This document shows positions 1-64,000 of a DNA stretch of 64,000 nucleotides, piece after piece (positions within the stretch are counted from its first letter, which is position 1; each line of letters starts with the position of its first letter). The notes beneath the pieces are model-generated. The model had not been told where the DNA came from and did no database searches. It saw only the letters and a program-made list of their open reading frames with translations. Source of the stretch: Lepidodermella squamata (taxonomy: Eukaryota > Animalia > Gastrotricha); contig JBLDXI010000001.1 of NCBI GenBank assembly GCA_047495785.1, positions 3,658,001 through 3,722,000 of the forward strand, written 5' to 3'. Both the position numbers and the translations under genes were made by a program.

Positions 1-1116
1 ATGCATGAGCAACCGCCCCCGTCACCCTTGCCGCGCGCGACAAGCCCGGCCGGGTCCTATGGGTCTCCCACGCCGCAGCCGCCGCCTAAAATGTCCGTCG
101 TAGTCGTCGCAGCTCAACAGCAGCAACAAGTTACAAACGGCACAACAAGCGGCTCGGCGACGCCCAATTCTATATCAAACGTAGCCGTGTCACCTAAACA
201 GGGCCCACCTGGCGGGCGGTCGGGGATTCTCGTCTCCCACCGCCCGTCGACGTCTTCCATCCGCAGCGGGGCGACGCTGAAAGGCTCATCCGAGCGCATT
301 TTGTCCGTTCAGGAATCGTTCGACTCGGCCTACGAGGTTCGCCTTTACGATGAGCTAACAATAGACCCGTCTCAGGTGGTCGCGAGGGCCATGGCGAAAC
401 GGGCGCCATTGCTGAAGGGAGAATCGCTATCGGACGATAATTACTCAATCACGACGCCCACTAATAAAAAATTAGCGCCCTCGTCGTTGATTTTAGCCGC
501 GGATAGCTCCGGGGGCCCGTATTTCAGCCGTCAAGCGTCGATGGCCGGTGATTTGTCACCCGTTGAGGAGCAGCCTGGGCACGAGCATGCGTCGAACTCG
601 ACCGCATCACCTGCTCATCACCCAGCAAGTAATAACAATAATAATAATAATTCCACGCCGAAAGCGACACGCTTCGTTGAATCGCCGGTCTCGCCGCCGA
701 AGCAGAAGTCGCTGCTTTCGATTTTCAAGGAGAAACGGGTGACACTGATGGAGCAGGTGAGGGGTGCGTCACCCAAGGCGGAGGCGCCGCCGCCCCTCCC
801 GCCGCCCGCGCACTCGGCGTCGGCGCATTGCGTGCCGGAATCTGGGACATACCCAGGGTACCCCCAGCAGCAGGTGATGACGCCGCAGCAGCAACGGGCG
901 CGCCAGGCGTACCACCAGGGCGGCGTGTCGCAGTCGCAGTCGATGAATAAGATGGCGGCGCAGGGTGGCCAGTCGCAGAGCCAGACGCCGCGGCAGTCGG
1001 GCGGCGGGCCTGGTCGGGGCCGGGGTCGCGGGCCGGCAGCGGGCGGCGGCGGGCCGATATCGGTCAATGCAAATATGATGGGCCGCATGGGCATGGGTGC
1101 AAGGGGTGATTCGTGA
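1..1116 (+). CDS. 3' terminal exon of a P/Q/S/G-rich low-complexity protein, probably begins upstream of the window
   Basis: 371-codon GC-rich open frame from base 1 to TGA at 1114-1116, followed by an AT-rich 3'UTR with AATAAA near 1252; RGG-type tail; no domain recognised. Confidence 0.6.
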   Translation: MHEQPPPSPLPRATSPAGSYGSPTPQPPPKMSVVVVAAQQQQQVTNGTTSGSATPNSISNVAVSPKQGPPGGRSGILVSHRPSTSSIRSGATLKGSSERILSVQESFDSAYEVRLYDELTIDPSQVVARAMAKRAPLLKGESLSDDNYSITTPTNKKLAPSSLILAADSSGGPYFSRQASMAGDLSPVEEQPGHEHASNSTASPAHHPASNNNNNNNSTPKATRFVESPVSPPKQKSLLSIFKEKRVTLMEQVRGASPKAEAPPPLPPPAHSASAHCVPESGTYPGYPQQQVMTPQQQRARQAYHQGGVSQSQSMNKMAAQGGQSQSQTPRQSGGGPGRGRGRGPAAGGGGPISVNANMMGRMGMGARGDS

Positions 1117-2063
1117 CGTCGACAAGTTATGTCTGTTCACTACTATTTTTGTGTGTGTACTTCGACGGCACTTCTATGCAAATAATCATCAGACAAGGAT
1201 TTGACGCAAAATGCCGTTATTATATTATTATATGAACGTGAAACGATGAGAAATAAAAATCAACGCAATTTTCTTCGAACCGATTGTCTCTTATTATCAA
1301 TTACCTATAGCTCGAGTGTGTTTTGTTCAAGGAAATGCATTATGGGAATTATTTTCGAAAATTAATCCGAATTATATTTTATTTCGTCAAAATTTTTAAT
1401 ATTTTTCAATTCCCAACTTCAAGAGCTTCAAGTTTCGGGATCTAAAAATGTGTAACCCTAATATTAAGGTTCCAGCGCTAATCTGAACCCTTTTCGATTT
1501 TTTTGTGCAATTTCGGCTTTTTCTTTTTTGATGCCCCTGTAAATCCGGAAATTTTCCAACTATCAGCAAGGTAGAAATTTTTTCAAACTTGGCTTGCAAG
1601 GCTTCAGATATCGGAAAAATCACTGATTTGTAAAATCGATATCGGCTCTGCAGAGCCTCTGTGCTGGAGTCTCAAATTTACTCTGAAATCCTAAGTAATT
1701 TAGGATATACATATGTGGATATTTAGGATTAGGATATAGGATATATATGATCACACCTATTTCCTAGTCCTCATTTTTAGGACCGAATCTGGAATTTTTA
1801 CGCAGCGCGATTATCAAAATCGATTTTTCATAAGATTCGCATAATATCTGTAGGCCGCGGCAATATCGTTTGTTCGTTCCCTTGAGTTGTTAATTTTATT
1901 GGTATCAAGTGTCTTGCCCGCATTTCGGACACTTATACAAATGCGCTAAAAAATGAAAAATGCTTTGGACAAAAATCAACCAGAAAAACACTCAAAATTC
2001 TCATTAAAACAAATTTCAAGAGCTGTGTCCTTTAAAAAATTTTATTCATTTTATTTACATGTA

Positions 2064-2636
2064 TTATTCGCACAAAAATGATAGCAGCTGAGTTGGCAAT
2101 ATAATTTTTCTGACAATGCGAGTTCTTTTATCTTTCTTCGGGACACTTTTCAAAATGACGTACCGGCAAAAATCTTGCAGGCTCGAACCGGTAAGACGCG
2201 GCTCGGCGTGGTCAAGCGTGAACTGTTCAGCCTTAGCCATGAAAATCGCTCGATTTCTGGCCTGCATTTCCGCAGGAATCATGAGAAATTTCGGGTTTTC
2301 TATGTGAGAGATTATCGCCTGAATCACGCCCCGACATGAATTTGCCGGGCTCCAATCTCGGTCGCAATAACCACTGCCACAGAGACACATCGTTCCGGTT
2401 GACTGGTCGATATTAGGGTGATAGATTTTTGTCAATAACCGGCACTTGGGCGAGGTCATTGGCCAATTTTCAGGGAATTTAATTTCGACCCAAAATGCGC
2501 CTTTATTGTAAGGCGGCTGATTCGGTTGTAGTAGTACATGCCAGTGTAATGGGTTGTGATCGGCAAACGAAATTTTATAGCCACTCTCAGCCAACTCTTG
2601 GGCTTCGAATTCTAGGCGAAGTCTACCGTCATCCAT
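2064..2636 (-). CDS. UBE2L3/UbcH7-like ubiquitin-conjugating enzyme with C-terminal SOCS-box-like extension
   Basis: PPYNKGAF, KIYHPNID...GTMCL (catalytic Cys), WSPA and KAEQFT match the UBE2L3 pattern; tail SSLQDFCRYVIL...LPTQLLSFL fits BC-box plus cullin-box; ttcatAG acceptor 2 nt before ATG. Confidence 0.85.
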   Translation of the reverse strand: MDDGRLRLEFEAQELAESGYKISFADHNPLHWHVLLQPNQPPYNKGAFWVEIKFPENWPMTSPKCRLLTKIYHPNIDQSTGTMCLCGSGYCDRDWSPANSCRGVIQAIISHIENPKFLMIPAEMQARNRAIFMAKAEQFTLDHAEPRLTGSSLQDFCRYVILKSVPKKDKRTRIVRKIILPTQLLSFLCE

Positions 2637-3201
2637 ATCTATGAAATTATTAGAGCAAAGTTATAATATTGGAATTTCTCAGGTGTGTTAAATGCTTATA
2701 GAAGAGTGAAACTGCCAAAAGCTTTCAGAGATCAAGGGTCAAAGGTCGGGAAAGCGGGGGAGATAAAAGCGAGAAATTATAGATAGCAAATATATATACA
2801 AAAACACTTGCGATAAATTATTTTTCCGTCAATATCCTATTTTTTTCATGGGCGGGGAAGGCAGATATTTTCATATAGCGCTGTTGAATAAGTCTACATT
2901 CAAGCCTGTTTACGTGAGTGATAACATGTCGAGATATTTAACGATGCGCACGATACGTAGTTAAATAACGTAAACAGTCTGTAGGTGAATAATAAAGCTT
3001 CATATTATGCATTTTTTTCTTGGCAGATCCTATAATTCCTATGCCAAGAATTACGATCATCTTCAGCTGAAAGAATGAGGCTATAGAACAATACGGGGAA
3101 AAAAGCTTCTCTATTCTTGGATAATACGGAACTCTATTCTTGGAAATGCCCCACCACCGTTCTTTCTAGAGTAAACAACTCTAATTTTGGACTGCGCAAA
3201 T

Positions 3202-3480
3202 ACGGGTGCCTAATTTCGGACAAATCAAGGTAAACGTTAACCCAGCCAAATTTGGTGTCGTTCCAAAGCCCTCCATGAACTGATGACGAATATCATTGTT
3301 TATAATGTTCGTTTATCTGAGTTTCACTCATGCATGTCACCTTGAAACTCAAGCCTAAAGTAGACTTTTTAGGCCGAACTTCGTCATCAATTCATAGAGG
3401 ACTTTCGAAAGACACCATATTTGGCTGGGTTGAAGTTTACCTTGATGTCCCTTGACCCTAAAATGTCCGAATTATTGGCC
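3202..3480. mobile_element. MITE with long imperfect inverted repeats
   Basis: 3226-3290 (caaggtaaac...cccagccaaat..ggtgtc...tgatgacgaa) is the reverse complement of 3381-3445; outer ends cggg..taatttcggaca / tgtccgaattattggccg. Confidence 0.75.
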
Positions 3481-3555
3481 GAAATTTTCCAGCGAAAAAA
3501 ATTTAAAAATAATCCAGAAAATTGTTAGCAGAATTTACCTATATTTTACCTTTAT

Positions 3556-4206
3556 TGTATTACCCAGGCTCTCAGCAGTGCTCAATTGCCAACAAGAAAT
3601 CAGGGCTAAAATAAAAAAACTTTCAAACAAGGTTTTGCCTATACTTGAATAGAGCAACTTCAATACTTCGAAACATGAATTAGCTACTCTTTGAACCGCC
3701 CATGCAAAAAACCAGCATATCAATAGACCATTTGATCTGATAATTCATTCGCTTTTTATTTCAGTCATTCTCTCGACTATGAAGAAGAGGTGCATAAAAT
3801 GACACATTCAAAAACGAATAAAACATGCAGAAACAACAAATTTCTAACAGCAAAAACCCGAGTAAACGAAAGTAGATATACGAATAATTTTTCAAAAATC
3901 GCGCGTAATAATTTTGATTTTATTTCTACTTTGTTATCAAGCGTTAAATTCGAATTCTAAAAATGTAAAAATTGAGGCAAGTTTTGGCTTCGATTTTTTT
4001 ATATTTCCTATCCGTTGTCTCATTCGCCCTCTATCAAGTGGGTCTGGCTCTCAGGCGCCGAGCGCAAATAAAGGTAGGTACAGTGTATAGGTTATCGGTT
4101 TTTCTTTAACGGCAACGAACGTCTTGATATCGCCTTTGTCGCTCATCGCTATTATCGTGGCTGATTCTTCGAAATCGAACCACTCGTGCACAAAATTAGC
4201 CGCGGC
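3556..4206 (-). pseudogene. Degenerate duplicate of the adenylyl cyclase last exon and 3'UTR
   Basis: Colinear match to 9832-10566 (e.g. gaggtgcataaaatgacacattcaaaaacgaataaaacatgca; cggcaacgaacgtcttgatatcgcc) with indels. Confidence 0.85.
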
Positions 4207-4209
4207 ACG

Positions 4210-4333
4210 ATGGGTTGTGATCGACAAAAACGAAATTTTATAACCACTCTCAGTTAAGTCTTGGGCTTCGAATTCTAGGCGAATCCTACCTTCTTCCTTC
4301 TCTTAATGAAGGTAATAAGGGCCAAGTTCTAAT
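4210..4333 (-). pseudogene. Fragment copy of the 5' end of the E2 gene, start codon lost
   Basis: gggttgtgatcg...ccactctcag...ttgggcttcgaattctaggcgaa matches 2551-2668; plus-strand cat (ATG) changed to ctt; frameshift. Confidence 0.85.
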
Positions 4334-5048
4334 TTTCCAAGGCGTGGCAGTAGCTAGAAACCGCCAAGACAATTGCCAAAAATCAGATGACAGTATAAAC
4401 TGCGTTGAACTGCATCAAAAAATTCCTGTAACTTCTGGAGCAATTCAAGAATTCGAATAATTATTCAGACCCCAGGCGCACAATTTCTCGAAGAGGCAAA
4501 AGAAATTTAGGTTGCACCTCAGCAGCAACATTTTGCGCCAAAGAACAAAAACTGAAACTCGAGCACATTCAAGAATCAAAATTATTGACTGCTGACCCAG
4601 CTGAATGATACCAAGAATACCGAGTCCAAAAAATGAACTTTATTTAGGAACAAAAATGTTTCCTTCAAAATGTATATTAAAACAAAACAGATAAATATGG
4701 CGGTCAAAACGTTTTCGGATTTCATCAGCTGATCGGCGATGTACAGAAATGACTTTATTATTCAATGACTAATAAGATTTGACCGAAATTAAAAATAACA
4801 TTGTTATCAAAGTCATGAAGGTTTCTAACAATTTTACAATTTAAAGAAATAGGAATAACATTAACATATTATAGGCGTATAATCGGTAAATAAACTCATC
4901 ATATTTAGAGTACCTAGTCTTCGGGAATTTTAGAGCTTAGAAAAATGAATGAATCAGTTTGCGAAGTTTAAAACATTCGTTATTGTTGGGTATGATAATA
5001 TCACGCATATATTATAATATGATAATATACGCATCATGAATCATGCAT

Positions 5049-6418
5049 TCAGTTTTCGTGGTCTGACGTAAAGTGGCCTGAAGTCGCTCGGTCATGGAAA
5101 TCGAGATTGTAACAATATGCATCTTCACAGCCGTGAGCGAATCGGCAAGTTGTTGCAGTTTTAGTGCAACCGCCGCCCGACGTGAAGTGAACACACGGCT
5201 TGCTTTTGTAGCCACGCACGCCTTTGCCGTTGTTGCGCCTGAAAAAATCGACCTCTTCCGTCGAATGCTTGTACGCACACGAGCTGCCATGCGGGCAAGC
5301 AAAACTGTACAGGCAGAGGTCGGAATACTGCTGTTTATGCTTAGGACGCTTCGAGCTGAAAACAATGTCCCATGAATCTTCATCATCCATAAATTCGTCC
5401 AAATCCCTGCTGGTGCTGGGATCCTGATATCGCCTTGCGAAAAGACGATCGTCCTCTTGAAAACGTTGCAGATACTGAACGTACGAAACTACGTCGGAGC
5501 AACCCAGTTTGGCAGCTTTTAACTTCAACTCTTTGAAATTGACAAGCTTGTTGAAGTCGTACAATTCGATCGACTCCGAAGCTGCATCATTCGCAACTTT
5601 CGGAATTCGTTGAGCAGGCATGATAATCAGGCATAAATTTTCAGAATCCAGCCATTTTGCTCTAGTTGGAAGGCGCCACTCTTTCGTGGTGCTTTGAGCC
5701 ACGCTTTCCAAAACGGCTTTGTCGTTGAGAATTTGGTCGAAGTGGAATACAAGACTGCGCTCTCGTGGTATTGGCTTATCCGGTGACCAGACGTAGTTGG
5801 CGTAACACACTCTTTCAACTCTGTCATCAATTATCGAAGTTGTCAGTCTATTCGGGTGTTTCCTTTGCAATTCCTGAATAGCTTCCGACAAAGCCGAACG
5901 GTATGACCAAACCTGTACAACAGCAATAGAACATTGATTGGTAACTGGTAACTCAGAATTTATCGCAAATTCACCTCTATTTTCCAGTTTTTTCGCTCTA
6001 GAACTTTGACGATAGCAGGGCGAACATCCCGATCGCCTGTAAGAATGATGATAGTACCACCTACTTCTTTATATTCGATGGCAGTTTCAACAATATCTGC
6101 TGTCATTTGCGTATCAACTTCCTTTTCTCGACCGTTGAACGATCGCGAAAACTTGAAAACACCAATATTTTTCTTGGCGATGCTGCGCCACAGCGTGTCA
6201 AGCGCCGGCGGTTCAGAACCGTAGAGACGACCCTCGCGACATTCCCGGTCGTCCAGCATGATTTTGCATAGTCTGCCGATGTCGACTCGAAATCGCTGGT
6301 CATGTGTCAGAGCCGGCAGAAGGCCCAGGCGCCCTGCCATCAACTTCTGCCCCTGGATGAAGAGATTGCTGTTGTCGATAAAAATCCAACACAAATCTTT
6401 AGCTTCGCTGTCGGCCAT
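5049..6418 (-). CDS. NYN (LabA/DUF88, PIN-fold) ribonuclease with two C-terminal CCCH zinc fingers; exons 6418-5975 and 5912-5049
   Basis: IFIDNSN, LYGSEPP, EKEVDTQM, LTGDRD acidic motifs; 62-nt GT-AG intron 5913-5974 joins WKIE|VWSY in frame; CLYSFACPHGSSCAYKH and CVHFTSGGGCTKTATTCRFAH. Confidence 0.85.
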
Positions 6419-7385
6419 TAGTCGATTTTTCCTGTAAAACTTGATATTAGAAACGAATGAAGTGGAAGTGCGAAGCACCTACCGCTTTGGTGGTCATTTT
6501 TTCAAAACACAGCATTGGAAATTTCAATTTTGTTTACAAATAAAAAAAATAAATTGCAATCGAAATTCATTTTAAACATGTGTGAATAAAATGCTGTTAC
6601 CCGCTACTTTTTTGTTACCCAAGAAACTACGCCGTATCCCCGGGCAATCGCCCAGAGGACACTTGACGTCGTCGTTCCTTTTTACCTTCCCGGATTTGCT
6701 ATTTGCTACCTCACTTCATCACACCTAGCTTTGTGAATTCCTCGTGGATTGCCTAAAGAGTAATGTCGAGAAACTGGAGGAGGCAAGCAAAAGATTGAGC
6801 AAACCGACTACAAGAGACCACGCTAACATCAACATCCACGTCAAGCTTTGCAATCAAGGGACCTCAAACCTAAAACTGCACATCCTAAGGGATTACCCCA
6901 GGGGTTAGCGGGCTACAAAACAAAACTTTTTGGGCAAAGTGATCACATACATTTCACACCTCCGCTTGTGGCTAGGGCGCACAGCTTTCAAATACCGTGA
7001 AAAGAGCCGTTAAATAAAATATGAATCATCATTCGATTTAAGATTAACCATCAGTTTCTTCCGTGAATTAATCGATACCGCTCGTCGCGCCATGCGAGGT
7101 CAAAAAAAATTCCCTGTGTTGCCTATTTTGAAGTATCTAATTTTGCCCCGATTTATCAGACTGGAATTGGGAACTTTTCACACCAATGTTGGAAATGTAT
7201 TTCTAATAAGATATGTGATATCTATAGGCCGAGACATCATCGTCTTTATATCATACGTACATCATAATCCCTTGATATGTTAATTCTTTATTGGTATCAA
7301 GTATCTTGCCCGCATTTCGGACACTTACTAACGCGCTAAAAAATGAAAAAGCTTTGGACAAAAATTAGCCAGAAAAACAATTATA

Positions 7386-59131: not shown

Positions 59132-61490
59132 CTAAACAGTGGTATCGTCGATTAAAACCGGCTGATCTTGCGTTTGACTTGGATCGATCACTCCGTTATC
59201 ATTCTTGACACGCTTGCATCCGAAAATACGTTCTGTGCAATGAAACGTCCAATCTCTCAACAAAGCTTCTCCGCCTTCGTTCTCGCCAGATTTTGAGTAG
59301 TAACGCGCTCGGTATTCGTCGACCAGCGAGCTTTCAGCCGGCAGCCATTCGTCGGTCGGGAGAAAGACGCTCGCCAGTTTATTTTTCCACCCGCGATGAG
59401 GCGATTTTATTAAGACGTAAATCGCAAATCCTGGAATTGGCACGAAAGACACTAAGGAAATGAGCCAGCCAATAGCGATTGACCATTTCGGGTATTGGTA
59501 GCTGCCATAGGACGGATCTCGCAGGTTCCATAGACCGATAAATAGAAGAGCAGCCATGATAAGGGGCGTAACTACCAGCCAACAAATTTTCCAAAAATAA
59601 TTTGGCTGTGAGCCAAGCATGAGTTTAACATCCTCTGAGAATCTGCTCAGCCCGTAAATGTAGCTGATAATAACGATTTCGAGGAAAGCAACGACTGTCA
59701 CAGTAATTGAAGCCGTGTACCAATCGATGAGTACGTAGAGGTACATCCCGCCTTCGCAGCAGAGAGGCAAACCGAGAAGGAAGCAAACAGCGGTAACAAG
59801 GCCAGTAACCAGAATTTTCCGAGTACGTAGCTTCGGGAAAAGATCGCATAGACCACTGACGACAGTATCAACAAAACCAAACTGGCTGTCGATCCCAAGC
59901 AGCAACAACATAAGAAAGAAACAAACTGACCAGAACGCACTGCCTGGCATTTCGGCAAGCGCTTGAGGGTAAACCTAAAAGAAAGTAGGAATTAAAGCGC
60001 CGAAATAGGTTCATAACAGCTTACCACAAAAGCCAAACCGGCTCCCGAGGCTGCGAATCGACTAATGGGCATTTTCGCCCGTTTTGACATGAAGCCTATT
60101 ACAGAAAATATTGCGAAGCCTCCGTAAAGGGCGGTGAACAGATCGCAAAACGGGATTCCAATCGATTCTCTAGAAATCATCCCTGTATAAATCGAAACTT
60201 TAAATCCTTAATGACTTACACTTGCAATCGATGGTTGAACTTGTTGTAGCTAGCCATTGTAATCAAACCGCCCCATGACGGCCCGAGCGAGAAGAACATT
60301 TGTAAGGCAGCTTCGATCCAGACGTCCTTTTCGAGAAGTTTCGAAAAGTCGGGCGTGAGGTAGAACGAAAGGCCTTCGACCGCCCCATCAAGCGTCAAAC
60401 CACGAATGAGTAATGCCGTTAGCAACAGGTAAGGCAGTGTTGCGGTGACGTAAACGACTTTGCCAGTTGTCCGAACGCCTTGCATTTGGCACAGAAAGAC
60501 AATTAACCAGGCGGAGAAGAGTGACAGAGCAAGATGCCATTGAGGTGGACCCATATTTTCAATGCCGCTATCACTTTTCAATCCAAGTACCACGTTGCTA
60601 AAATCGAGAGATAACTGATTTTTAGTCAATTTATGAGAAATCTTACTTCCAAAAATCTTCGCTGGGCAGAAGGAAATCCTTGGGGGCGGCACTTGAGCAT
60701 TCCGAGAAATTCGAAGTTCCATTTGAGGAAATTAAAGTCCGATTAAATAAAGTGGAATTGCTATCACAAGACTCCGCTGCGGCTGTAAAAGGGTCATGGC
60801 ACTTCTCTAAAATTAGCAAAATTAAAAGAACAATATTTCGCAATTATTGAAAAATTACCTGTGTTCCAAGAATTTGTGCAACCTATCCATGGTAAATTTC
60901 CGGATACAGATTTCACCAGGTAAAAAAGGCCTGTATTGTTTAGATCAGAGTCAATAAAAATTCGAATTCTGCAGGGGTATAACTTACACCATGTTAATAG
61001 CATGTTGTAATAAATACTAGCTATTCCGGAGAGGAGGACGCATGCGTAACCGACGCCCTTGAAAATGGGGCACAGGCTCCACATGGTGAGCGGACTAAGG
61101 CCGGAAAATTGGCCTAGCGCCACCTCAATATAAAACAGCGGCATTCCACCAAACAACATGGCCACCAAAAATGGAATGAGAAATGCCCCACCACCATTTT
61201 TCATACACTGTGAATCAAAATGAACTCGGTTTAACAAGATTTTTTATTTCAAGTAAATTTACCAGGTATGGAAATCGCGTGAGTTCGCCAATACCAACGG
61301 AATATCCCAAGGTGGCTAAATAACAAAATACCAAGGTACCAAAAATTGATAGACAAATGACCCTACCCAGGAAGAATTCCATCTTGTTGCCCCATTGGCC
61401 TCTCTGCTGCCGCCTCCTTGTTGCCGCTGTATCTGGCGTAGTTTGCACTTCATTATTTTCGACTAATTTCTGCTTAACAGGCGAAGACAT
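59132..61490 (-). CDS. SLC6 sodium:neurotransmitter symporter (GlyT/PROT-like), multi-exon
   Basis: RGQWGNKMEF, RFPYL, NGGGAFLIP, GKVVYVTATLPY, QMFFSLG..WGGLITMASYN, GAGLAFV, LGIDSQF. Confidence 0.9.
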
Positions 61491-62727: not shown

Positions 62728-64000
62728 TCACAGTGCTGTAATAGCCTCGTCGCCTCTCTTTCTCTCAATGTTGTAATTAGTCACCGCTGCCGAAATGCTC
62801 TCCTCATCCATGGATGCAGGCGATGGCGCGGCCTGGCAGCAATGTCTCATCCTCGTTCCTCCAATCGATTTCTGTGGGGTACTTGAATCCAAATCCCGAT
62901 CAGGGCTGCGTCCAACATTAGTCGATGCATCTTCATCCGGGGTCCCGACTGAAAATCCAGGATTTTCATGGCCTTGATCTTTACTATGCTGGGAACTAGC
63001 TGACTTGATTGACTGGACATCTTCGATGACAACCTTATGATCAGTTTTAGGATGTTGTTCCTGAGGTGGCAATGTTCCCTTGACGCCGAACATGCGGCAA
63101 GTACAGTAGCAAACCCAGCATTTGAACAAAGATTCGCATTTAACAGGCCTAGCAATGCCATGACCCTCCAGTTCCCGGCAGAAAACGCAATGCTCGGCCG
63201 CTCCAAGGTTAGATCCTTTACAGCTTTTCTTGCCTTTGGTGTATCGATGTTTGTAATTGTCGACATGAGTCTTTTCAGCCGGGAGCCATTCTTCAGTCGG
63301 CAAAAATACGCTGGACAGTTTTTTCGTGATGCTTTTATGAGGTGAAGTCATAATCGCATGAATGGCGAATCCTGGAATAGGAAGAAATGAAAGAAGCGAA
63401 ATAGCCCATCCCAGACCAATGGCCCAGCCAGGGTATTTATAACCCCGATAAGATGGTTGATCGAGGTCTTTCAGGCCGATAAAAAGCAAAGCTCCCATGA
63501 AAAGCGGGGTGACGATGAGCCACGAAAATTTCCAAAGAATATTCGGCCGTTTGCCAAGCATCAGATAGACATCGTCGGAAAACCGACTCAAACCATAGAT
63601 GTATGCCACAATGACAACTTCCAGAAAAGCAACGACAGTTACGGTGATAGCTGCAGTGTACCAGTCGATCAAGACGTAGAGGTACATTCCACCCTCTGCG
63701 CAAATTGGTAGGCCAAGAATGAAGCATACGCTACAAACTGCTGCTGTGATCTTAACTTTATGGCCACGCAACACAGGGTACAGGTCGAAAAGCCCACTGA
63801 CCACCGTGTCCACAAAGCCAAACTGGCTGTCGATGCCGAGAGTGAGCAAGGTGAGGAAGAAGCAAATCGACCAAAACGGGCTAGCCGGCATTTCGGCAAT
63901 GGCTTGAGGATAAACCTAAAACATCAATTTTCGTGGAAACACCAATGATACCAATAAGGACAAGGATACCACAAAAGCCAAGCCCACTCCGGAAGCCGCG
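62728..64000 (-). CDS. Second SLC6 transporter, 3' part only (continues beyond the window)
   Basis: SGVGLAFV|VYPQAIAEMP..PFWSICFF..LLTLGIDSQF; same intron position as the neighbouring paralogue. Confidence 0.9.

What the first reader, a model, noticed from the sequence alone, without database searches (positions are those of the whole stretch)
2064..2636. UBE2L3-like E2 enzyme fused to a SOCS box
Seen: an intact E2 (HPN, catalytic Cys) continues past the usual UBE2L3 end into 42 residues (2067-2192) reading SSLQDFCRYVIL...IILPTQLLSFL. Known: this fits the SOCS box (BC box SLxxLCRxxI plus LPxxL cullin box), which recruits Elongin B/C-Cul5, and Cul5 ligases act with the RBR ligase ARIH2, whose E2 is UBE2L3. 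I do not know of an E2-SOCS-box fusion. Inference: the protein may tether its own E2 to a CRL5, or use the UBC fold as a substrate receptor or decoy. The E3-contact loop (YPFKPP to WPMTSP) and a CGSGYC insert after the active Cys are also atypical.
Basis: partly seen in the sequence, partly recalled or inferred. Interest (0 to 1): 0.78.

Follow-up and report, generated by a model that had tools for sequence, protein, structure and literature searches.

The report
E2 enzyme with a SOCS-like tail
An animal gene encodes a UBE2L3-like ubiquitin-conjugating enzyme that ends in a short motif normally used to plug substrate receptors into Elongin B/C-cullin ligases; I found this combination nowhere else, and its function is untested.

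Summary
Window 2064-2636 (minus strand) is one uninterrupted 190-codon ORF. Residues 1-147 are a complete UBC fold with HPN and the catalytic Cys. It is closest to UBE2L3/UbcH7 (Pfam UQ_con 1e-23; AF2 pLDDT 85; Foldseek top hits are UbcH7).

The 43-residue tail gives SOCS_box as its only Pfam hit: 22.7 bits, E 1.2e-4, just under the 23.5-bit cut-off, spanning the whole profile. It has a perfect BC box (S-L-x3-C-x3-I). Eighteen residues later comes L-P-x2-L-x3-L. That fits the published Cul2-box consensus but not the LP-phi-P motif required for Cul5.

None of the 149 nearest E2 relatives, out of 1.84 billion cluster representatives, carries a SOCS box. None is closer than about 45% identity.

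An RNA-like public run holds the whole ORF, tail included and unspliced.

Another first-stage note (s1-407860, unchecked) reports an E2-SOCS gene on another piece of the same genome. Many other notes report SOCS-box expansions there.

Best reading: a lineage-restricted, probably active E2 that docks itself to Elongin BC-cullin scaffolds. This is a new domain architecture, and its function is inferred only.

The parts
2064..2636 (-). Complete single-exon ORF, 190 codons plus TAA stop
   Evidence: G at -3 and G at +4 around the ATG, read from the sequence.
2196..2636 (-). UBC (E2) domain, residues 1-147, UBE2L3-like
   Evidence: Pfam UQ_con 83.9 bits, E 1e-23. PDB best match is UBE2L3 at 8e-23, then UBE2L6. 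AF2 pLDDT is at least 90 for 124 residues. Foldseek top hits are UbcH7, TM by target 0.82-0.85.
2412..2420 (-). HPN motif, residues 73-75
2385..2387 (-). Catalytic Cys C84, followed by the atypical C-L-C-G-S-G-Y-C stretch (2-residue insertion)
   Evidence: Aligned to UBE2L3 C86. Spacing and Cys counts compared with 149 relatives.
2067..2195 (-). C-terminal tail, residues 148-190, SOCS/VHL-box-like
   Evidence: Pfam SOCS_box is the only family hit: 22.7 bits, E 1.2e-4, cut-off 23.5. Helices predicted at 150-163 and 182-188 with low confidence.
2154..2183 (-). BC box, residues 152-161 (S-L-Q-D-F-C-R-Y-V-I)
   Evidence: Fits (S,T,P)LXXX(C,S,A)XXXphi from PMC4878042.
2073..2099 (-). Cullin box, residues 180-188 (L-P-T-Q-L-L-S-F-L), Cul2-type by motif
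   Evidence: Fits phiPXXphiXXXphi, 18 aa after the BC box. LP-phi-P of the Cul5 box is absent.
2041..2055 (-). Two AATAAA hexamers 9-25 nt after the stop (2050-2055 and 2041-2046)
   Evidence: Read from the sequence.
4210..4303 (-). Decayed partial copy of the gene's first ~30 codons (ATG lost, 2-nt insertion), 1.66 kb upstream
   Evidence: 87-95% nucleotide identity over 76+19 nt.

Best explanation
This is a real, lineage-restricted gene for a UBE2L3-derived E2 that has gained a C-terminal BC box plus cullin box. The BC box most likely binds Elongin C. That would place the E2 on an Elongin B/C-cullin-Rbx scaffold at the position normally held by a substrate receptor. By motif the cullin would be Cul2 rather than Cul5. 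Because the catalytic core is kept while the usual E3-docking residues have drifted, I favour a catalytically competent E2 whose recruitment to the ligase comes from its own tail rather than from RING, HECT or RBR contacts. Shown here: the ORF, the E2 fold and catalytic residues, the SOCS-type motifs, the lack of any catalogued relative with this architecture, and probable transcription. Inferred: Elongin BC binding, the choice of cullin, thioester activity, and what gets ubiquitylated.
For: The ORF is intact with a complete UBC domain and tail in one frame. UQ_con scores 1e-23 and SOCS_box is the only family hit by the tail, E 1.2e-4 over the full profile. The BC-box consensus is fully met and a cullin box lies at the published spacing. 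Controls were negative. Sixteen of the 17 nearly invariant E2 positions are kept, including H73, P74, N75, C84, W95 and P97, even though identity to any known E2 is only about 35-45%. That argues for continued selection on catalysis. The fold is confidently UbcH7-like. Run X1 is RNA-like. It holds the ORF at depth 64.7, while a repeat that is about 1,200-fold amplified in DNA run X2 reaches only about 92 and the single-copy flanks are at 0. One X1 contig joins the UBC domain to the BC box, and a second, overlapping contig reaches past the stop, with no joint. The four listed differences between that copy and the window are three synonymous changes and A25V. Tail GC3 (0.44) is nearer to the UBC part (0.50) than the overall GC of the flanks (0.33). 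Unchecked scan notes report a second E2-SOCS locus and many SOCS-box arrays in this genome.
Against: The SOCS_box score is below Pfam's cut-off. The tail has no detectable relative anywhere. Its AF2 confidence is only 52-63. The LP-phi-P Cul5 motif is missing. The loose motifs arise by chance about 1.6 times per 64 kb, and this scan reads very many genes, so a chance match among all E2 tails is not negligible. The active-site surroundings are remodelled: a 2-aa insertion after the Cys and a 4-aa deletion in the 108-124 loop. Activity is therefore not assured. X1's label as RNA is the tool's guess, and contigs cannot show transcript ends. No orthologue is available to test selection on the tail.
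Confidence: 0.45

Rival explanations
1. It is a substrate receptor or decoy. The protein would be an ordinary member of this genome's expanded SOCS-box receptor repertoire. Its UBC fold would serve as the recognition or bait module, for proteins that bind UBE2L3-type E2s or for its own turnover, and not as a working E2 on the ligase.
For: Known SOCS-box proteins are receptors with interchangeable N-terminal modules (PMC4812663). Unchecked scan notes describe many SOCS-box arrays with varied partners in this genome. The PDB hit list shows that several bacterial effectors and many E3s grip UbcH7, so an E2-shaped bait is conceivable. Active-site loops are remodelled.
Against: HPN and the catalytic Cys are kept despite deep divergence, which a pure bait would not need. 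The residues through which UbcH7 is gripped (F63, K9, K96, K64, recalled from memory) are the ones that changed, which makes it a poor mimic of the canonical E2.
Confidence: 0.22
2. It is an active or drifting E2 paralogue with a meaningless tail. The 43 extra codons would be a chance open extension, for example after loss of the ancestral stop, that happens to resemble a SOCS box and binds nothing.
For: The Pfam score is under the cut-off. The tail has no homologue. A 43-codon open run has about a 5% chance at the flank composition. The loose motifs occur by chance. Tail pLDDT is low.
Against: The joint chance of an open tail and a full-length SOCS_box match at E 1.2e-4 is small. The negative controls were clean. 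The BC box is perfect and the spacing correct. The tail is identical in the second haplotype or copy seen in X1. A second E2-SOCS locus is reported in the same genome (unchecked).
Confidence: 0.2
3. It is a dying duplicate: a non-functional, recently duplicated or retroposed copy that is still open by luck.
For: The gene has a single exon. A decayed partial copy lies 1.66 kb away. Repeats surround it. The exact protein is absent from public protein sets.
Against: Identity to any E2 is at most about 45%, so the gene is old, yet the ORF and catalytic residues are intact. It is probably transcribed. Differences between copies are mostly synonymous.
Confidence: 0.1

Closest known systems
UBE2L3 (UbcH7) and UBE2L6 (UbcH8)
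   Same: They are the best sequence and structure matches. The protein has the same class-I-sized UBC core with HPN, the catalytic Cys, and the W95-P97-A98 loop.
   Different: Identity is only 35-42%. Changes are K9 to F, Y61 to W, F63 to M, K64 to T, P65 to S and K96 to S. There is a 2-aa insertion after the Cys and a 4-aa deletion in the 108-124 loop. It also carries a 43-aa tail that UBE2L3 lacks.
SOCS-box receptors of Cul5 ligases (SOCS, ASB, SPSB, WSB, Rab40)
   Same: The module is C-terminal and about 40 aa long, with a BC box followed by a cullin box, and it hits Pfam SOCS_box over the full profile. From my own knowledge, Rab40 also places an enzyme fold (a GTPase) in front of a SOCS box.
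   Different: The score is just under Pfam's cut-off. The LP-phi-P needed for Cul5 (PMC4812663) is absent. The N-terminal module is an E2, which is not among the listed partner domains SH2, WD40, SPRY, ankyrin, LRR and GTPase.
VHL-box receptors of Cul2 ligases (VHL, LRR-1, FEM1, PRAME, ZYG-11)
   Same: It has a BC box plus phi-P-x-x-phi-x-x-x-phi, 8-23 aa downstream. Both consensus and spacing are met.
   Different: That consensus is loose and partly shared with Cul5 boxes. No profile hit to a VHL family was obtained. Cul2 binding is untested.
E2s with built-in docking or E3 functions: Cdc34/UBE2R acidic tail, UBE2K UBA domain, and the E2/E3 hybrids UBE2O and BIRC6
   Same: In each, an E2 core is extended by a module that supplies its own recruitment. 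UBE2O and BIRC6 are described as E2/E3 hybrids (PMC12818219 abstract). UQ_con plus UBA clusters were seen. From my own knowledge, the Cdc34 tail docks the E2 to the cullin.
   Different: None of these uses an Elongin BC-binding box. Here the E2 would sit at the receptor end of the cullin rather than at the Rbx end.

Membership tests
E2 ubiquitin-conjugating enzymes (Pfam UQ_con) | Profile score above the curated cut-off | tested here: met
   83.9 bits against 27
E2 ubiquitin-conjugating enzymes (Pfam UQ_con) | HPN motif and catalytic Cys in register | tested here: met
   H73-P74-N75 and C84 align to UBE2L3 and to conserved columns of 149 relatives
E2 ubiquitin-conjugating enzymes (Pfam UQ_con) | UBC alpha/beta fold | tested here: met
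   AF2 pLDDT 85.4. Foldseek top hits are UbcH7, E about 1e-13.
E2 ubiquitin-conjugating enzymes (Pfam UQ_con) | E1-dependent ubiquitin thioester formation | not testable with these tools
   Needs a biochemical assay
UBE2L3 orthologue group | Closest known E2 is UBE2L3 | tested here: met
   PDB 84 bits for UBE2L3, 75 for UBE2L6, 60 for UBC13
UBE2L3 orthologue group | Conserved E3-contact residues (K9, F63, K64, K96; list recalled from memory) | tested here: not met
   The protein has F10, M60, T61 and S96 at these positions. It is a diverged paralogue, not the orthologue.
SOCS box (Pfam PF07525) | Profile score at or above the gathering cut-off (23.5 bits) | tested here: not met
   22.7 bits for the tail alone and 18.8 in the whole protein; E 1.2e-4 and 0.002. 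A narrow miss with full-length coverage of the profile.
SOCS box (Pfam PF07525) | BC box (S,T,P)LXXX(C,S,A)XXXphi | tested here: met
   S152-L153-x3-C157-x3-I161
SOCS box (Pfam PF07525) | Cul5 box with LP-phi-P | tested here: not met
   The sequence reads I-I-L-P-T-Q. The requirement is stated in PMC4812663.
SOCS box (Pfam PF07525) | Binding of Elongin B/C and Cul5 | not testable with these tools
   No multimer prediction or assay is available
VHL box (BC box plus Cul2 box) | phi-P-x-x-phi-x-x-x-phi located 8-23 aa after the BC box | tested here: met
   L180-P-T-Q-L184-L-S-F-L188, 18 aa after I161. The motif is loose: about 1.6 chance matches per 64 kb.
VHL box (BC box plus Cul2 box) | Binding of Cul2-Rbx1 | not testable with these tools
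   Needs an assay or multimer model

The most novel reading that the evidence does not exclude
This is a natural self-docking E2: a catalytically active UBE2L3-type enzyme that is a built-in subunit of an Elongin BC-cullin ligase. It would occupy the receptor position and so bypass or rewire the usual RING/RBR hand-off. It would be one member of a small family in a lineage that has greatly expanded SOCS-box modules.
Probability: 0.3. Interest if true: 0.8.

Novelty: new variant of a known kind. Interest (0 to 1): 0.62.

Why it matters
E2s and cullin-ligase receptors are normally separate proteins that meet only through the RING or RBR partner. A natural E2 carrying its own Elongin BC/cullin docking box would be a different way to wire a ubiquitin ligase. 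It would resemble engineered degrader fusions and recall the E2/E3 hybrids UBE2O and BIRC6. It would also give a simple, testable case of how a transthiolating E2 behaves when held at the receptor end of a cullin. If the tail proves inert, the gene is just one more diverged E2 paralogue.

Tried and rejected
- **Word-index protein search with the whole protein:** it found only one ordinary UBE2L3-like protein.
- **Word-index search on the tail:** it found nothing.
- **Exact-sequence look-ups:** the protein is not on record.
- **PDB sequence search with the tail and Atlas feature search with the tail:** both were blank.
- **Atlas search with the whole protein and by fold:** they returned only plain UQ_con clusters or UQ_con plus UBA, RWD or trypsin clusters.
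- **Single-sequence AF2:** too poor to use (pLDDT 49.6).
- **Splice donor inside the tail:** I considered that G-T-A-C-G-T at about 2158-2163 might be a donor that removes the tail. I rejected this because an X1 contig runs straight through it.
- **Spliced 5' UTR:** I considered that the X1 contig's divergence just upstream of the ATG marks a splice junction. I rejected this because there is no AG at the break. In addition, X2 carries a matching alternative haplotype: a 2636-to-2722 joint and a heterozygous 2604 T>C.
- **Retrogene origin:** I looked for a poly-A tract or target-site duplication and for flanking transposon ends. No clear evidence was found.
- **Literature searches for an E2-SOCS architecture:** they found none, but such searches cannot prove absence.

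Full report
**What is there.**
Window 2064-2636 on the minus strand is a single open frame of 190 codons from ATG to TAA. The ATG has G at -3 and G at +4. Two AATAAA hexamers lie 9-25 nt after the stop. The neighbouring genes are a NYN-domain protein, a guanylate cyclase, a BTB-BACK protein and SNF transporters. The window therefore comes from an animal genome, which matters because the SOCS box is reported as specific to metazoans (PMC3670738).

**The E2 part.**
- Residues 6-126 hit Pfam UQ_con at 83.9 bits, E 1e-23.
- The best solved relatives are UBE2L3 (84 bits), then UBE2L6 (75) and UBC13 (60).
- The alignment runs from residue 7 to R147 against residues 6-151 of the 154-residue UBE2L3. 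Both ends of the domain are therefore present.
- With an alignment of 149 relatives, AF2 gives mean pLDDT 85.4, with 124 residues at 90 or more.
- Foldseek's first eighteen PDB hits are all UbcH7 or UbcH8 chains.
- Sixteen of the 17 nearly invariant E2 positions are kept, including H73-P74-N75, C84, W95 and P97.

**How diverged it is.**
The exhaustive HMMER search of 1.84 billion cluster representatives found 6,711 hits, but none below 1e-30. The nearly full-length hits are at most about 45% identical, and a few short fragments reach 52%. The protein is therefore an old, diverged paralogue, not the UBE2L3 orthologue.

**Atypical features of the E2 core.**
- W replaces the Y61-equivalent residue. 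None of 149 relatives has W there.
- F replaces K9 and M replaces F63 (15 of 149 relatives have M).
- T replaces K64, S replaces P65 and S replaces K96.
- The Cys-to-Trp spacing is 11, against 8-9 in most relatives, with three cysteines in eight residues.
- There is a 4-residue deletion in the 108-124 loop beside the active site.

I recall K9, F63, K64 and K96 as UbcH7's contact residues for HECT, RING and RBR partners. That list comes from memory and was not tested here.

**The tail.**
- Residues 148-190 give exactly one Pfam family at E up to 10, namely SOCS_box. The match covers profile positions 4-38 of 39 at 22.7 bits and E 1.2e-4. Within the whole protein it scores 18.8 bits, E 0.002. 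The curated cut-off is 23.5.
- Against published consensus motifs the BC box is perfect: S152-L-x3-C157-x3-I161 fits (S,T,P)LXXX(C,S,A)XXXphi (PMC4878042).
- Eighteen residues later, L180-P-T-Q-L-L-S-F-L188 fits the Cul2-box consensus phiPXXphiXXXphi. That box is said to lie 8-23 residues after the BC box (PMC3355856).
- The Cul5 box requires LP-phi-P (PMC4812663). Here the sequence is I-I-L-P-T-Q, so that requirement is not met. The same review notes that SOCS1, with an incompletely conserved Cul5 box, shows no or weak Cul5 binding.
- AF2 predicts helices at 150-163 and 182-188, but only at pLDDT 52-63. No relatives of the tail were in the alignment to inform this part.

**Is the tail a chance match?**
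- Ten junk ORFs from the same AT-rich neighbourhood gave no SOCS_box hit, and their best chance hits to any family were 14 bits.
- None of the 149 nearest E2s hit SOCS_box at E 0.01, although 46 of them have C-terminal extensions of 30 residues or more. None has a C-terminal BC-box motif.
- The loose BC-plus-cullin regex occurs 1.6 times per shuffled 64-kb six-frame translation. That is roughly 1e-4 to 5e-4 for a 43-residue tail, in line with the HMMER E-value.
- An open run of 43 codons has about a 5% chance at flank composition.
- Chance is therefore unlikely for this one gene. It is not negligible for a scan that reads very many genes, so I leave that rival at 0.2.
- The tail has no detectable relative anywhere. 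Its selection history cannot be judged from here.

**Expression and copies.**
Two public runs hold the stretch, and I laid them on 1500-4500.
- X2 covers the flanks at 100% identity and about 40-fold depth. It shows the 1601-1701 repeat at about 49,000-fold, so it behaves as genomic DNA.
- X1 holds the ORF at depth 64.7, yet the same repeat reaches only about 92 and the single-copy flanks are at 0. That profile is not genomic, and it fits the tool's guess that X1 is RNA.
- In X1 one contig spans 2131-2636, joining the UBC domain to the BC box. A second contig spans 2057-2160 and overlaps the first by 30 nt. No joint is reported, so the tail is not spliced out. This includes the G-T-A-C-G-T at about 2158-2163 that could have been a donor.
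- The X1 copy differs at eight positions in 506. The four listed differences are three synonymous changes and A25V. The tail itself is identical.
- Just upstream of the ATG, X1 diverges. X2 carries a matching alternative form: a joint from 2636 to 2722 and a heterozygous T>C at 2604. I read this as a second haplotype.
- X2 shows no contigs over 2005-2509. The tool warns that its filter makes such holes uninformative.
- Depth in X1 doubles over 2057-2160, which I cannot explain. One possibility is a second transcript sharing the last 100 nt.

**Local and genome context.**
A decayed copy of the first ~30 codons lies at 4210-4303. Its ATG is lost and it has a 2-nt insertion, so the locus has duplicated locally.

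Earlier first-stage notes of this scan are AI notes that I did not check. They report another 'E2 fold fused to a SOCS box' on a different piece of the same genome (s1-407860). They also report two dozen SOCS-box arrays, some carried on transposons. If true, these raise the prior that the tail is a real, shuffled SOCS-type module.

**Mechanism.**
The shown facts are an intact, probably transcribed gene, a catalytically equipped UbcH7-like fold, and a C-terminal BC box plus cullin box. The rest is inference.

I infer that the BC box binds Elongin C, so that the protein joins an Elongin BC-cullin-Rbx scaffold where a receptor normally sits. I favour an active, self-docked E2 for two reasons. The catalytic residues have survived deep divergence. 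The canonical E3-contact residues have drifted, as expected if recruitment no longer depends on them.

The main rival is that the UBC fold is a bait or recognition module of an ordinary receptor. Lesser rivals are an inert tail or a dying duplicate.

The missing LP-phi-P and the changed contact residues leave it unsupported for this protein. From my own knowledge, Cul2-type ligases work with ARIH1, which also uses UBE2L3, so a link to an Ariadne ligase is not excluded.

**Novelty.**
I found no E2 with a SOCS or VHL box in any of these sources:
- the nearest 149 cluster representatives;
- the 60 nearest Atlas fold clusters;
- the Atlas feature search;
- the literature searched.

Known E2 extensions seen here are UBA, RWD and similar domains. 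UBE2O and BIRC6 are the known E2/E3 hybrids. I could not query InterPro architectures, so 'not catalogued' remains provisional.

I class this as a new variant of known kinds: two familiar modules in a new combination, with function untested.

Noticed in passing
window 4210-4303 (-): A decayed partial duplicate of the E2 gene's 5' end. It is 87-95% identical at the nucleotide level, has lost the ATG and has a 2-nt insertion. After it, the sequence is unrelated.
   Followed up: partly
window 1601-1701: A very high-copy repeat. Summed contig depth is about 49,000 in run X2 against about 40 for single-copy flanks. Many loose ends lie at 1607 and 1641.
   Followed up: no
window 3224-3446: A MITE-like inverted repeat with 67-nt arms, 88% complementary and 89 nt apart. 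It is multi-copy in both runs, with 'opposite strands' joints.
   Followed up: no
window 2636-2722: Structural variation directly upstream of the ATG. X2 has a contig joining 2636 to 2722, and X1's contig diverges after 2636. T>C at 2604 is heterozygous in X2 and present in X1.
   Followed up: partly
window 2057-2160: In X1 the last 100 nt of the ORF sit on a separate contig at twice the depth of the rest (131 against 65). The contig runs on for 30 letters unlike the window past 2057. A second sequence may share this end.
   Followed up: no
window 5049-6478 (-): Two adjacent ORFs about 68 nt apart: a NYN-domain ORF (Pfam 2.5e-09) and a 280-aa ORF with CCCH-like Cys/His clusters. They are probably one gene with a short intron.
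   Followed up: no
window 59132-59950 and 62728-63891 (-): Two tandem ORFs that each match the C-terminal half of the SNF sodium:neurotransmitter symporter profile (positions 341-523).
   Followed up: no
window 1-1116 (+): A long low-complexity ORF rich in Q, N, P, S and G that runs off the window's start. GC is 0.50 here against about 0.40 elsewhere.
   Followed up: no
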